In this document: positions 27,932 through 47,810 of the stretch, piece after piece
Position numbering within the stretch: position 1 is the first letter of the stretch
How the letters are laid out: each line of letters starts with the position of its first letter
NCBI GenBank assembly: GCA_963514005.1
Contig: OY740792.1
Span: forward strand, 67,084,001 to 67,148,000
Origin: Raja brachyura
Taxonomy: Eukaryota
Reading direction: 5' to 3'
DNA length: 64,000 nucleotides
Program-made: the position numbers and the translations under genes
The notes under the pieces: generated by a model
What the model saw: the letters and a program-made list of their open reading frames with translations, nothing else
What the model was told of the DNA's origin: nothing
Databases searched by the model: none

Positions 27932-28078
27932 TCATAAATTATTTTTATCTTTGACCTTTAAGACGGCATATTCTGTTTCTTGGGATTGCTCGGTCCATCT
28001 CAATTCCTGTCTTTGCTGTCCCTTGTTGAAATGAACAGGTGCATAATGCAGATTTTCATTGTTTATTGAAACATTATC
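27932..28078 (-). CDS. Exon 6: terminal cytoplasmic exon with ITIM (LHYAPV) and ITSM-like (TEYAVL) motifs
   Basis: Acceptor ttttgtgttacag; phase 0 reads DNVSINNENLHYAPVHFNKGQQRQELRWTEQSQETEYAVLKVKDKNNL*. Confidence 0.88.
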   Translation of the reverse strand, partial: DNVSINNENLHYAPVHFNKGQQRQELRWTEQSQETEYAVLKVKDKNNL

Positions 28079-46000: not shown

Positions 46001-47810
46001 GCCAGCACTGGACCTATTGGGGATATAAACACTGCGACCGAGGTTGAGGTTGTGTTCATTCTCTATGTTGTATCATTAGGGAGACAGGAGGAGCTCCAGA
46101 TGCAAGTTTTGTTTTCCAAAGATGCACTCAAAGCGCTGGAGTAACTCAGCGAGTCAGGCAGCATCTCTGGAAATCATGGATTTAAGTTCGGGACCTTTTG
46201 TCAGACTGGGTTGGTTTGTGCCGGAAAATGAGCATTAATAGAGAGAGATGAAATGCAGGAATGAAATGGAAGTAGAGACAGGGAACTGCAGGCGCTGCAG
46301 TCTTAAGCAAAACACAAAATGCTGGAGGAACACAGCGGTTAAGGCCGCATCTGTGGAGGGGATGCACAGGCGGCGTTTCGGGTTGGGGAACTTGGGATTC
46401 GTGTGATTCACCAACCCCACCGCATCAGATCTCGGGGTGGCTGTGGAGGCAGATACGATCGTAGAGTTGAAGAGACTTTTGGATAGACACATGAATATAC
46501 AAGTTAGTTTAACCTGGCCTCATGGTCCGCACGAACATTGTGGGCTGAAGGGCCTGTTCCTGTTGTAGGTTCTATATTAATTACCTTGGATGTGCAATGT
46601 TGTTCCATTTCCTATACACTTTTTCCAGACATCATCTATCAGTACCACACAATGGTAAGTGTCTGCATCGTGCACAGTCACCTCCCAAATGACCAGCGAG
46701 TCCTTAGACACGGACAGGCGGTCGCTTGTCTTCAGAAAACTCCTGAACTTGTTGTCCCAGAGATCCGGGTTGTCTTTCGTCCGAATCCAGTATCGCCTCA
46801 TTGAAACTTTCTCCCCCTCTCCGGGTAGCAGAGAGCAGTTGAACCTCGCTGTCTGCCCTCGGAGAAGCGTCAGAGCAGCAGGAGACTGGATCACCCTCAC
46901 ACCGACAGCGGACCCTGGCACGGAAAGTGAATATAGTTAACGACGTCTTCCGAGTAACTCCAGTTTACTATCATGGGCACAAGGACAGTGAGGTCCAGGG
47001 GCAATTAAACCACCCTCGCTCACCTGTAACCACTTGTGTAGGAAGGAACTGCAGATGCTGATCTATATCGAAGACAGACACAAAGTGCTGGAGACGCTAG
47101 TAGCATCTCTGGAGAACATATCTGAAGAAAGGTCGCGACGCGAAACGTCACCTATCCATGTTCTCCACAGATGCTGCCTGACCCGCTGAGTTACTCCAGC
47201 ACTCTGTGAAACGTCACCTATCCATGTTCTCCACAGATGCTGCCTGACCCGCTGAGTTACTCCAGCACTCTGTGAAACGTCGCCTATCCATGTTCTCCAC
47301 AGATGCTGCCTGACCCGCTGAGTTACTCCAACACTGTGTTTTGTTCAAGATTCCAGCATCTGCAGTTCCTTGTGTCGCTTATATTTAAGATAGACACAAG
47401 GTGCTGGAGTAACTCAGTGAGTCAGGCAGCAACTCTGGAGAAAAATGACGGGTGACGTTTCGGGTCGGAACCCTTCGCTTAAATATAGTCGTGTTAACTT
47501 TCTGACATAAAATTATTTTAACTGCATTTTCAATTTCTGCTTTTGTGTCTAAATTAAAAACTTGCTTGCAACACCATCACGTGCACCTACACTGAAACAA
47601 ACACATATTCAAAAACAAATTGAACATAAATTACATTGAACATGACATTTCTAAAAGACAGCAAAAGAGCAACAAACATGAGTGCAAAAGAGATAGAAAG
47701 AAACAAGTTATCGGAAGACAACGTGAACAGAGGTTGGCAAGCGTGAACATGAATGACTTACCTGGGAGAAAGAGGCAGAGTGTGCAGATGAAGTTTGCAA
47801 ACGATGACAT
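27932..47810 (-). CDS. Six-exon Ig-superfamily inhibitory receptor (leader-VJ-C1-TM-cyt-ITIM/ITSM), 335 aa; SIRP-like, non-rearranging antigen-receptor-like
   Basis: Exons 47762-47810, 46585-46914, 42560-42871, 32183-32284, 31697-31764 and 27932-28078. All introns are GT-AG with phases 1,1,1,1,0, and the exons join into one stop-free ORF with a coherent domain order. Orthology cannot be assigned without a search. Confidence 0.88.
28150..29040 (-). mobile_element. CR1 3' fragment hosting a minisatellite
   Basis: QRRFTMMLPG...RGNFITQRV..WNE..EEVVEAGTI. Confidence 0.85.
28268..28714. repeat. 12-bp minisatellite (TCCATGCACCTG) x ~37
   Basis: Directly visible tandem array. Confidence 0.97.
31697..31764 (-). 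CDS. Exon 5: cytoplasmic (E)SSVHDTTVRIQRLRKRKNSVNE
   Basis: Acceptor tatttttatag, donor GAG|GTGAGT; phase 1-0, which bridges the TM exon to the phase-0 terminal exon. Confidence 0.82.
32183..32284 (-). CDS. Exon 4: transmembrane segment SFIKYYFILLSLILIVPICVWILYHYHSKLKKGK
   Basis: About 19-residue uncharged hydrophobic run followed by a basic stop-transfer; acceptor gattttcaag, donor AAAG|GTAACG; phase 1-1. Confidence 0.88.
33128..34380 (+). mobile_element. Non-autonomous non-LTR element inserted in the foldback arm
   Basis: Starts aagatagcggcg; ends AATAAA followed by (TCTAA)n; host sequence resumes gcatcc|ctc.ggacagcc with a short ATCC duplication. Confidence 0.7.
33370..33910. repeat. Compound minisatellite GACCCGACTCGGTCCCGGAGCGGTTC + (CAG/CGG)n, ~10 units
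   Basis: Directly visible. Confidence 0.95.
36300..36690. repeat. ~31-bp subterminal tandem repeat (TTGGTTATTTGGCTTTTCG..GTTGCGTCCG) x ~12
   Basis: Directly visible; shorter arrays at 2630-2735, 13345-13450 and 32820-32960. Confidence 0.93.
37615..38278 (+). mobile_element. Young CR1 3' fragment with an open C-terminal ORF
   Basis: 187-aa ORF LVRPHLEYCVQFWSP...; near-identical to 44752-45290; (TTTCTATG)n tail. Confidence 0.95.
38850..39535 (-). mobile_element. Penelope-like element 3' part (GIY-YIG endonuclease and 3' terminal repeat)
   Basis: Manual translation FTCITSNLTYCIRCSRCGPLYIGETK...EH...HFN; runs into the abundant cagcatctgca/cttcagactga terminal repeat. Confidence 0.9.
39676..39879. 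other. Assembly gap (204 N) in intron 3
   Basis: N run. Confidence 1.
41571..41735. repeat. ~165-bp imperfect palindrome with a (TA)n loop
   Basis: atacggcgtaagtgctttat / ataaagcacttacgccgtat, extending to tatacatcttt / aaagatgtgtata. Confidence 0.85.
42560..42871 (-). CDS. Exon 3: Ig C1-set domain
   Basis: AKPDISL...LTLTCVAAGFFPRELNMSW...NGDGSFNVSSRL...ATCLVQH; acceptor ttctactttacgcag, donor A|GTAAGT; phase 1-1. Confidence 0.95.
43246..43806 (-). mobile_element. CR1 3' fragment (second subfamily, ATATGGTT tail)
   Basis: LVRPNLEYGVQFWSPNYRKD. Confidence 0.9.
44752..45290 (+). mobile_element. CR1 3' fragment
   Basis: ILAIEGLQRRFTRLIPG...; CR1 tail. Confidence 0.93.
46585..46914 (-). CDS. 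Exon 2: Ig V-set domain with germline J-like G strand
   Basis: GSAVGVRVIQSP...RFNC...RYW...SLVI...DADTYHC...IGNGTTLHIQ; acceptor tttccgtgccag, donor CAAG|GTAATT; phase 1-1. Confidence 0.95.
47142..47338 (+). repeat. Three tandem 66-bp copies of a Penelope terminal segment
   Basis: Units start at 47142, 47208 and 47274. Confidence 0.93.
47762..47810 (-). CDS. Exon 1: signal peptide MSSFANFICTLCLFLP(G)
   Basis: ATG at 47810-47808 with A at -3; hydrophobic leader; phase-1 donor CAG|GTAAGT. Confidence 0.88.

What the first reader, a model, noticed from the sequence alone, without database searches (positions are those of the whole stretch)
27932..47810. Hidden non-rearranging VJ-C1 antigen-receptor-like inhibitory receptor
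Seen: six phase-compatible exons give L-V(J)-C1-TM-cyt-ITIM/ITSM (335 aa), and four of them are absent from the ORF track. The V exon already carries the J-type GxGTxLxI strand and ends at a splice donor, with no RSS. Known: the V+C1 pair is the Ig/TCR building plan. Outside Ig/TCR/MHC, C1 domains are confined to a few families (SIRP, tapasin, B7-H6-like and non-rearranging VJ-C1 genes), which are discussed as relatives of the pre-RAG receptor. Inference: this is a chondrichthyan checkpoint-type receptor with a TCR/light-chain-shaped ectodomain and an inhibitory tail. It may be a lineage-specific family that automatic annotation labels only as SIRP-like or Ig-like.
Basis: partly seen in the sequence, partly recalled or inferred. 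Interest (0 to 1): 0.85.

Follow-up and report, generated by a model that had tools for sequence, protein, structure and literature searches.

The report
Ray SIRP-like V-C1 inhibitory receptor gene
This is an apparently intact six-exon gene for a cell-surface immune receptor with a germline-joined V domain, one C1 domain and an inhibitory tail; the same gene is already auto-annotated as "SIRP-like" in at least 13 sharks and rays, so it is a real but not hidden family.

Summary
On the minus strand, six GT-AG exons join in compatible phases to 335 codons plus a stop. They encode a leader, a V domain that ends in a J-type strand, a C1 domain, a transmembrane segment, a short cytoplasmic exon and a last exon with ITIM and ITSM motifs. 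The V exon ends at a splice donor and has no RSS heptamer. The C1 exon meets all three published C1-set hallmarks. The 204-N gap lies inside the 10.3-kb C1-to-TM intron and touches no exon.

The gene is not hidden in public data. Orthologs with the same exon-by-exon layout are predicted in at least 13 elasmobranch species. They are named SIRP-beta-1-like, SIRP-alpha-like, Ig kappa-like or uncharacterized. The window's copy groups with the rays.

By sequence the family is about as close to SIRP-alpha d1-d2 as to Ig light chains and UrIg2. "SIRP-like" therefore describes how it probably works, not proven orthology. Sharks keep four tail tyrosines, and this copy stops after the second.

No RNA evidence could be obtained, and synteny was not testable. 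I found no paper on the family. The scan's unchecked notes report similar VJ-C1 genes on other pieces of this genome. Verdict: a new member of a known kind, of moderate interest.

The parts
47762..47810 (-). Exon 1: start codon and signal peptide (MSSFANFICTLCLFLP, then a split Gly codon); phase-1 donor gtaagt
   Evidence: By eye, the LFLPG-x-AVG end resembles the leaders of the ray orthologs P0046 and P0034.
46585..46914 (-). Exon 2: V-set domain with a germline-joined J-type G strand (IGNGTTLHIQ). It ends at a splice donor and has no RSS.
   Evidence: Pfam V-set 1.9e-7. PDB hits to TCR alpha, Ig kappa and VNAR over residues 5-108. No heptamer. 66-67% identical to Pristis. AlphaFold model pLDDT 89, with neighbours skate VNAR (Z 12.8), CD79b (12.7), TCR (12.2) and the NCAM I-set domain (13.4).
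42560..42871 (-). Exon 3: C1-set domain (LTLTCVAAGFFPRELNMSW ... ATCLVQH), phase 1 in and out
   Evidence: Pfam C1-set 1.3e-13. It has the FFP motif, 13 residues from Cys to Trp, and C-x-V-x-H, which are the criteria of PMC2785349. PDB hits to IgG CH3, UrIg2 and SIRP-alpha. 64% identical to Pristis. The C1 domain of the ortholog model matches C1-set domains at Z 11-12.6.
39676..39879 (.). Assembly gap (204 N) inside intron 3, flanked by interspersed repeats. It touches no exon and was not filled.
32183..32284 (-). Exon 4: transmembrane segment without a charged residue (S-FIKYYFILLSLILIVPICVWILYHYHSKLKKGK)
   Evidence: Hydrophobicity scan, sequence, 60% identical to the Pristis TM exon
31697..31764 (-). 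Exon 5: 68-nt basic cytoplasmic exon (ESSVHDTTVRIQRLRKRKNSVNE), phase 1 in and phase 0 out
   Evidence: Best splice-compatible candidate of a blind scan. It aligns with EPSVHDKNVDNQITRKRIKDSVNK of Pristis.
27932..28078 (-). Exon 6, coding part: ITIM (LHYAPV), ITSM-like (TEYAVL), the conserved KVKDKNN block, then the stop at 27934-27932
   Evidence: EYAVLKVKDKNN is shared with most orthologs, with one or two changes in some. Contigs of two DNA runs that lie over the stop list no difference or indel there among the rows shown.
27824..27931 (-). Relic of the ancestral distal tail, now behind the stop codon (..QTDNYHKTTLFSQTIYVEYKK, interrupted by further stops)
   Evidence: tblastn of the shark and ray orthologs runs on past the stop

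Best explanation
The locus is an apparently intact single gene. It is the ortholog, in an unnamed ray or skate, of a receptor gene conserved in sharks and rays that automatic annotation calls SIRP-like.

It encodes a type I membrane glycoprotein with these parts:
- a signal peptide;
- one V domain whose J-type strand is encoded in the germline, so no rearrangement is needed or possible;
- one C1-set domain;
- an uncharged transmembrane helix;
- a cytoplasmic tail with an ITIM and an ITSM-like motif, 25 residues apart.

The gene structure, the domain types, the motifs, the orthology and the conservation are shown here.

The mechanism is inferred. The V domain binds a still unknown ligand. Src-family kinases then phosphorylate the two tyrosines. 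The paired phosphotyrosines recruit the tandem SH2 domains of SHP-1 or SHP-2, and the bearing cell is dampened, as with SIRP-alpha.

In this species the tail is shorter than in sharks. It stops after the second tyrosine motif, and the rest survives only as a relic in the 3' UTR.
For: - Exon model: it has canonical sites and compatible phases.
- Orthologs: the five exons after the leader match annotated orthologs at 58-66% identity to Pristis, and the leader resembles theirs by eye.
- Distribution: the family is present in 8 shark and 6 ray species.
- Trees: the V and C1 gene trees broadly separate rays from sharks, which points to orthology. In the C1 tree the window falls in the ray clade (SH-aLRT 99); in the V tree its position is unresolved.
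- Domains: Pfam V-set and C1-set score above their cut-offs, and all three C1 hallmarks of PMC2785349 are present.
- Tail: the tail is the best conserved part of the protein. EYAVLKVKDKNN is shared by most sharks and rays, with one or two changes in some, while the ectodomain is 50-65% identical.
- Likeness to SIRP-alpha: SIRP-alpha d1-d2 aligns with the catshark ortholog over the whole V-C1 unit (52.2 bits). The G-x-G-T-x-L-x-V-x-A-K-P junction and the VICEVxH(I/V)T motif are shared.
- Signalling precedent: SIRP-alpha signals through ITIMs and SHP-1/2 (PMC12975943).
- Activating twins: twins with an Arg in the TM helix exist in rays (P0033, P0046, P0047), as with SIRP-alpha and SIRP-beta.
Against: - There is no RNA evidence for this species. 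All runs found behave as DNA.
- The orthologs are predicted (XP_) models, not cloned cDNAs.
- The window has one C1 domain, whereas mammalian SIRPs have two.
- The family scores no better against SIRP-alpha than against a kappa light chain (60.3 bits), and is not far from UrIg2 (38.8 bits). SIRP membership by descent is therefore open.
- The tail lacks the conserved YEE motif and the third and fourth tyrosines of the shark orthologs. The window's branch is also long (0.36 and 0.54), so some relaxation of constraint is possible.
- The ligand, the expressing cell type and SHP binding are all untested.
Confidence: 0.8

Rival explanations
1. It is the true elasmobranch ortholog of SIRPA by descent. 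It binds a CD47 homolog, and the 'don't eat me' axis would then date to the base of the jawed vertebrates.
For: - SIRP-alpha is the second-best PDB hit of the catshark ortholog overall (83.2 bits), with the V-C1 junction and F-strand motifs shared.
- Shark orthologs carry four tail tyrosines. From memory, not checked here, SIRP-alpha also has four.
- Paired activating twins exist in rays.
- A caecilian protein named SIRP-alpha-like aligns over the whole architecture, including all four tyrosines.
Against: - A kappa light chain scores higher over V-C1 (60.3 against 52.2 bits), and the window's V exon alone finds TCR, Ig kappa and VNAR but no SIRP V among the 60 best hits shown (E-values up to 0.21).
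- The window has one C1 domain, not two.
- Synteny could not be examined.
- The caecilian protein found no relatives that would bridge to tetrapod SIRPs.
Confidence: 0.25
2. It is a separate, old VJ-C1 lineage, related to antigen-receptor precursors such as UrIg and UrIg2. It would resemble SIRPs only in its tail and in its paired-receptor logic.
For: - The profile of the family hits UrIg2 V-C1 (66.4 bits) and light chains (75.4 bits) at least as well as the SIRPs.
- The nearest sequence matches of the V exon are TCR alpha, Ig kappa and VNAR.
- A skate VNAR is among the best structural neighbours (Z 12.8, 27% identity).
Against: - These scores are close to each other and do not resolve branching order.
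- UrIg and UrIg2 have three to nine C domains and no ITIM tail (PMC12227049).
- No linkage to the MHC or to the antigen-receptor complex could be tested here.
Confidence: 0.2
3. The window's copy is a decaying or recently disabled gene, because its tail is cut short by a premature stop relative to all its relatives.
For: - The stop falls directly after KDKNNL, where relatives continue with (F/I)YEEP...
- Recognisable relics of the distal tail follow it, with further stops.
- The terminal branches are long.
Against: - All six exons are open and all splice sites are canonical.
- The structural Cys and Trp residues and both proximal tyrosine motifs are kept.
- Rays in general have already lost the third and fourth tyrosines (VxNFTV, TTSFSL), so the lost part carried little signal in this lineage.
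- In a ~91% identical second copy seen in DNA runs, the exon differs less than the adjacent intron.
Confidence: 0.1
4. It is an assembly chimera: the L-V-C1 half and the TM-cyt-tail half come from different genes that were joined across the N gap.
For: The gap (39676-39879) lies between the two halves, and continuity across it cannot be read. DNA runs show a second, ~91% identical copy of the TM and last exons.
Against: - Both halves lie on the same strand, in the right order and in matching phase.
- They show like divergence from the one Pristis protein: 66% and 64% upstream of the gap, 60%, 58% and 64% downstream.
- Every ortholog has exactly this combination.
Confidence: 0.03

Closest known systems
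SIRP-alpha (SHPS-1 / PTPNS1 / CD172a) and the SIRP paired-receptor family
   Same: - It has a V domain with a germline J-type strand, joined directly (..V-x-A-K-P..) to a C1-set domain.
- It is a type I membrane protein with ITIM-type tyrosines in the tail.
- Sister genes carry a basic TM residue and a short tail.
- The catshark ortholog aligns with SIRP-alpha d1-d2 over the whole V-C1 unit (52.2 bits).
- Public annotation names the orthologs SIRP-like.
   Different: - The window has one C1 domain instead of two. Two occur in Hypanus and Mobula through a recent tandem copy.
- It has two tail tyrosines here, against four in sharks.
- The V domain is short and has no predicted C' and C'' strands.
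- Descent from the SIRP lineage, synteny and CD47 binding are not shown.
UrIg and UrIg2, the non-rearranging shark VJ-C1 genes (PMC12227049)
   Same: Both are elasmobranch genes with a V exon that already holds the J strand, followed by true C1 domains. UrIg2 is among the best PDB matches.
   Different: UrIg2 has three to nine C domains. Its recombinant V-C1-C2-C3 part forms a disulfide-linked homodimer with an Fc-like part, and the paper's text never mentions an ITIM. This gene has one C1 domain and an inhibitory tail. It is not mentioned in that paper.
Ig light chains and TCR chains
   Same: They share the V plus C1 layout, the phase-1 exon borders, the G-x-G-T-x-L strand and the C1 hallmarks. 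A kappa chain gives the highest single V-C1 score (60.3 bits).
   Different: - This gene has no RSS and no separate J segment.
- It has no conserved interchain cysteine.
- Its TM helix is uncharged.
- It has its own signalling tail instead of CD3 or CD79 partners.
PD-1 / BTLA-type ITIM + ITSM checkpoint receptors
   Same: The tail combines an ITIM and a T-x-Y-x-x-(V/I/L) motif at a spacing that suits tandem SH2 phosphatases.
   Different: Those receptors have a single V or I domain and no C1 domain. No sequence relation beyond the Ig fold was seen (PD-1 Z 12.0 and BTLA Z 11.5, tied with many others).
PRARP, NKp30 (NCR3) and NITR: other germline-joined VJ receptors
   Same: They have a non-rearranging V domain with a J-like strand. 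From memory, some have ITIM tails or charged-TM partners (not checked here).
   Different: PRARP and NKp30 have no C1 domain. From memory, NITRs carry a second V/I-type domain rather than a C1 domain.

Membership tests
C1-set Ig domain | (F/Y)(F/Y/H)P at the start of the BC loop; exactly 13 residues between the B-strand Cys and the C-strand Trp; x-V-x-H after the F-strand Cys (PMC2785349) | tested here: met
   The exon reads C-VAAGFFPRELNMS-W, which has the FFP motif and 13 residues between Cys and Trp, and T-C-L-V-Q-H. Pfam C1-set scores 51.5 bits against a cut-off of 21.
C1-set Ig domain | Fold matches solved C1-set domains | tested here: met
   This was tested on the Pristis ortholog model (C1 part, pLDDT 70-85). 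It matches B7-H6 d2, IgE, IgNAR C, MHC II beta2, UrIg2 and SIRP-gamma d3, all at Z 11.8-12.6. The window's own C1 exon was not folded.
Germline-joined (non-rearranging) VJ domain | The V framework and the G-x-G-T-x-(L/V)-x-(V/I) G strand lie in one exon, with no RSS | tested here: met
   G-N-G-T-T-L-H-I lies inside the V exon, which ends at gtaatt. No CACAGTG heptamer lies in or beside the exon.
Rearranging antigen receptors (Ig/TCR) | Separate V and J (and D) segments flanked by RSS | tested here: not met
   The gene is not a member.
SIRP family | Ectodomain of V-set D1 plus two C1-set domains | tested here: not met
   Only one C1 exon is in the window. An exon hidden in the 204-N gap cannot be excluded. 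Hypanus and Mobula orthologs have two C1 domains through a recent tandem copy.
SIRP family | Inhibitory member with cytoplasmic ITIM tyrosines that recruit SHP-1/SHP-2 | tested here: inconclusive
   The motifs are present: LHYAPV and TEYAVL here, and four tyrosines in sharks. Phosphatase binding cannot be tested with these tools.
SIRP family | Paired activating member with a basic TM residue and a short tail | tested here: inconclusive
   Such twins exist in Pristis, Hemitrygon and Mobula hypostoma (P0033, P0046, P0047). No such exon or gene lies in this window.
SIRP family | Sequence closer to SIRPs than to other V-C1 families (descent) | tested here: inconclusive
   The catshark ortholog scores 52.2 bits against SIRP-alpha d1-d2, 60.3 against kappa, 43.4 against lambda and 38.8 against UrIg2.
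SIRP family | Position in the SIRP gene cluster (conserved neighbours) | not testable with these tools
SIRP family | D1 binds CD47 | not testable with these tools
   This needs a binding experiment.
UrIg / UrIg2 | A VJ domain followed by three or more C1-type domains, forming antibody-like dimers | tested here: not met
   The gene has one C1 exon and then a TM exon. UrIg2 is described in PMC12227049. Dimer formation was not tested.

The most novel reading that the evidence does not exclude
The family is the living cartilaginous-fish form of an ancestral membrane-bound VJ-C1 receptor. It would be a common root of the SIRPs and a close cousin of the gene that RAG invaded. It would already have been organised as inhibitory and activating twins in the elasmobranch ancestor, and perhaps paired through its C1 domain like an antigen-receptor chain. 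The SIRP-type checkpoint logic would then be as old as Ig, TCR and MHC.
Probability: 0.15. Interest if true: 0.7.

Novelty: new member of a known kind. Interest (0 to 1): 0.4.

Why it matters
C1-set domains outside Ig, TCR and MHC are rare, and each such family bears on how antigen receptors arose. The literature I could search treats UrIg, UrIg2, NKp30, PRARP and the SIRPs as the non-rearranging relatives. It does not mention this V-C1-ITIM family, although sharks and rays all seem to have it, some with activating twins.

If trees and map position tie it to the SIRPs, the SIRP lineage reaches back to the first jawed vertebrates. If they tie it to UrIg, Ig or TCR instead, it is a further relic of the pre-rearrangement receptor, and one that signals by itself.

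For this window alone the result is modest: one more ortholog, with a shortened tail.

Tried and rejected
- RNA support: the look-up of sequencing runs on the V exon gave no run on record as RNA. Laying four runs on 27800-32400 showed even, repeat-dominated DNA cover. None of the joints shown linked the TM, cyt and last exons, though about 2,300 more were not shown. The junctions therefore remain unconfirmed by reads.
- Bridge to tetrapod SIRPs: a word-indexed search with the family profile found only family members. The search with the caecilian look-alike found only itself.
- Paralogs or an activating-type TM exon in the window: none were found.
- Whole-ectodomain fold: the model of the Pristis ortholog from 8 sequences was poor in V (pLDDT under 50). 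V-C1 geometry and light-chain-like shape were therefore not assessed, and only the C1 part was used.
- Structure neighbours do not single out a family. Z values are tied for C1 and for V.
- Literature: six searches found no description of this family. The UrIg paper PMC10530332 is not held.
- Homodimer test with complex prediction: not sent, because the report does not claim binding and the alignment is shallow.
- Steps left out under the operators' rules: the joined 335-residue model was never sent to a search or fold tool, and exons were searched one by one by reference. The N gap was neither filled nor laid with reads.
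Full report
**What is there**

The region 27932-47810 holds one gene on the minus strand.

| Exon | Coordinates | Length |
|---|---|---|
| Leader | 47810-47762 | 49 nt |
| V | 46914-46585 | 330 nt |
| C1 | 42871-42560 | 312 nt |
| TM | 32284-32183 | 102 nt |
| Cytoplasmic | 31764-31697 | 68 nt |
| Last | 28078-27935, stop at 27934-27932 | 147 nt with stop |

A script check shows that every intron is GT-AG. 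The phases are 1,1,1,1,0, and the split codons read G, A, S and E. The total is 1008 nt, which is 335 codons plus the stop. The introns are 847, 3713, 10275, 418 and 3618 nt long.

**The assembly gap**

The 204 N at 39676-39879 lie inside the 10.3-kb C1-to-TM intron. They are 2.7 kb from the C1 donor and 7.4 kb from the TM acceptor, and both sides are interspersed repeats. No exon abuts the gap and no frame is carried across it.

Continuity cannot be read. It is supported indirectly. The two sides carry consecutive exons of one gene, on one strand and in matching phase. Their identity to the same Pristis protein is similar: 66% and 64% upstream of the gap, and 60%, 58% and 64% downstream. A further exon inside the gap cannot be excluded.

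**Domains**

- *V exon.* It scores as Pfam V-set (1.9e-7, 31.7 bits against a cut-off of 26). It has Cys26, Trp42 and D-A-D-T-Y-H-C. Its G strand reads I-G-N-G-T-T-L-H-I, the J-type G-x-G-T-x-L-x-(V/I) pattern, and runs straight into the donor gtaatt.
- *No RSS.* No CACAGTG heptamer lies in or beside the exon. V and J are joined in the germline.
- *V matches.* Alone against the PDB, the exon finds TCR alpha, Ig kappa and VNAR domains over nearly its whole length (E 1e-3 to 1e-2). An AlphaFold model from an alignment of 22 sequences is confident (pLDDT 89). Its neighbours are tied: NCAM2 I-set (Z 13.4), skate VNAR (Z 12.8, 27% identity), CD79b (12.7), TCR (12.2), PD-1 (12.0) and NKp30 (11.4).
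- *V shape.* The model has no C' or C'' strands, and there are 61 residues between the two cysteines. It is a short V domain of the VNAR or I-like kind.
- *C1 exon.* It scores as Pfam C1-set (1.3e-13). It meets all three hallmarks listed by Hatherley et al. (PMC2785349): an FFP motif, exactly 13 residues between Cys and Trp, and C-L-V-Q-H.
- *C1 fold.* The C1 part of a model of the Pristis ortholog matches solved C1-set domains at Z 11.8-12.6. These include B7-H6 d2, IgE, IgNAR C, MHC II beta2, UrIg2 and SIRP-gamma d3.
- *TM and tail.* The TM helix has no charged residue. The tail has L-H-Y-A-P-V (ITIM) and T-E-Y-A-V-L (ITSM-like), with the tyrosines 25 residues apart.

**Relatives**

An exhaustive HMMER search with the V exon found four close clusters and then only distant multi-V proteins. 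The close clusters, and further members found with them, are NCBI-predicted proteins.

- Sharks: Scyliorhinus canicula, Mustelus, Heptranchias, Stegostoma, Hemiscyllium, Heterodontus, Cetorhinus.
- Rays: Pristis, Hypanus, Hemitrygon, two Mobula species, Narcine.
- Names given: 'signal-regulatory protein beta-1-like', 'tyrosine-protein phosphatase non-receptor type substrate 1-like' (that is, SIRP-alpha-like), 'immunoglobulin kappa light chain-like', 'Ig heavy chain Mem5-like', 'T cell receptor beta chain-like' or 'uncharacterized'.

They share the window's architecture exon by exon. tblastn of these proteins on the window hits the V, C1, TM, cyt and last exons at the predicted borders. By eye, the leader resembles theirs as well.

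In V and C1 trees, rays and sharks largely separate. In the C1 tree the window's copy sits in the ray clade (SH-aLRT 99), while in the V tree its position is unresolved. By identity it is nearest to Pristis in both trees (67% and 64%). This is the pattern of an orthologous gene present since the elasmobranch ancestor. None of the database proteins is from the window's own species.

**The tail**

The tail is the most conserved part. The stretch EYAVLKVKDKNN is shared by most sharks and rays, with one or two changes in some, while the ectodomains are 50-65% identical.

- Sharks carry four tyrosine motifs: LHYAxV, TEYAVL, VxYSTV and TxYASL.
- Rays have lost the third and fourth (VxNFTV, TTSFSL).
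- The window's copy ends at a stop directly after KDKNNL. Relics of the distal tail follow in the 3' UTR, with more stops.

Contigs of two DNA runs that lie over the stop list no difference or indel there among the rows shown. These runs may stem from the same source as the assembly.

**What it is like**

Against the PDB, the catshark ortholog aligns with human SIRP-alpha d1-d2 over the whole V-C1 unit (52.2 bits). The junction G-x-G-T-x-L-x-V-x-A-K-P and the motif VICEVxH(I/V)T are shared, and the C1 domain also aligns with d3 (29.6 bits).

Other V-C1 units score in the same range: a kappa light chain 60.3 bits, lambda 43.4 and UrIg2 38.8. A family profile gives the same picture, and so does a caecilian look-alike. 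That caecilian protein (Rhinatrema, 'SIRP-alpha-like') aligns over the full architecture, including all four tyrosines, but it found no bridging relatives.

By sequence, then, the family is roughly equidistant from SIRPs, light chains and UrIg2. By working logic it is SIRP-like:

- It has a germline VJ domain, a C1 domain, an uncharged TM helix and an ITIM tail.
- Rays have twins with a near-identical ectodomain, an Arg in the TM helix and a short tail (P0033, P0046, P0047). This mirrors SIRP-alpha and SIRP-beta (PMC12975943).

**Mechanism**

The gene structure, the domain classes, the motifs, their conservation and the orthology are shown. The mechanism is inferred. Ligand binding by the V domain would lead to phosphorylation of the two tyrosines by Src-family kinases. 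SHP-1 or SHP-2 would then dock through their tandem SH2 domains and inhibit the bearing cell. The ligand, the cell type and the oligomeric state are unknown.

**What could not be done**

- No run on record as RNA holds the V exon. The four runs laid on 27800-32400 behave as DNA, and none of the joints shown links the exons.
Synteny was not testable.
- The joined 335-residue model was not sent to any tool. Each exon was searched by reference.

**Novelty and verdict**

But the gene is not hidden in public data, and nothing here shows a special tie to the pre-RAG receptor.

I found no paper on this family. The UrIg2 paper and the cartilaginous-fish MHC paper do not mention it. Unchecked notes of this scan report further VJ-C1 receptor genes on other pieces of the same genome.

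I class it as a new member of a known kind: a SIRP-like, non-rearranging VJ-C1 receptor. Interest is moderate, because the family as a whole, more than this copy, deserves a proper phylogenetic and synteny study.

Noticed in passing
window 27824-27931 (minus strand): Behind the stop codon the DNA still reads as the distal tail of the shark and ray orthologs (..QTDNYHKTTLFSQTIYVEYKK), broken by further stops. The conserved (F/I)YEEP motif stands in another frame. The tail was shortened in this lineage.
   Followed up: partly
relatives P0033 (Pristis), P0046 (Hemitrygon), P0047 (Mobula hypostoma): Ray genomes encode twins with a near-identical V-C1 ectodomain but a TM helix holding an Arg and a short tail. 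This is an activating/inhibitory pair like SIRP-beta and SIRP-alpha. In the trees the twins group by lineage, which suggests gene conversion or recent copying.
   Followed up: partly
relatives P0034 (Hypanus), P0037 (Mobula birostris): The C1 exon is tandemly duplicated in myliobatiform rays, giving V-C1-C1. The two copies are each other's nearest relatives, so the three-domain SIRP-like layout arose independently there.
   Followed up: partly
window 28156-28790: A 12-nt minisatellite of about 50 copies lies in the last intron, starting about 80 nt upstream of the last exon's acceptor. It yields long artificial ORFs on both strands.
   Followed up: no
window 32764-36746: A foldback element lies inside intron 3, with long arms built of 32-nt and 54-nt repeats and G+C-rich simple sequence (inverted pairs I4-I16). 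Another first-stage note (s1-881028) reads it as a MULE-like transposon.
   Followed up: no
window 27941-28150 and 32065-32362, in DNA runs X1, X3 and X5: Besides near-identical low-depth contigs, these runs hold contigs about 90-91% identical over the last exon and the TM exon, at several-fold higher depth. In the one contig examined (X1, last exon) the exon differs less (about 5%) than the adjacent intron (about 10%). These contigs are either a paralog or the ortholog of a sister species in mixed data.
   Followed up: no
window 46601-46630 (minus strand): The window's V domain has an extra Cys directly before the J-type strand (..VWKKC-IGNGT..). It is absent from all orthologs seen. The J motif itself holds an N-G-T glycosylation sequon.
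   Followed up: no
window 57150-57791 (+), 16709-17209 (+): These are transposon ORFs: a DDE_3 transposase (2.6e-12) and a reverse transcriptase fragment (3.1e-18). The rest of the window is repeat-rich and shows no other cellular gene.
   Followed up: partly
relatives P0041 (Heterodontus), P0001 (Pristis X2), P0045 (Hemiscyllium): These predicted isoforms skip the TM exon, read through after the cyt exon, or end after C1. They are possible soluble or tail-less forms, and all are model predictions only.
   Followed up: no
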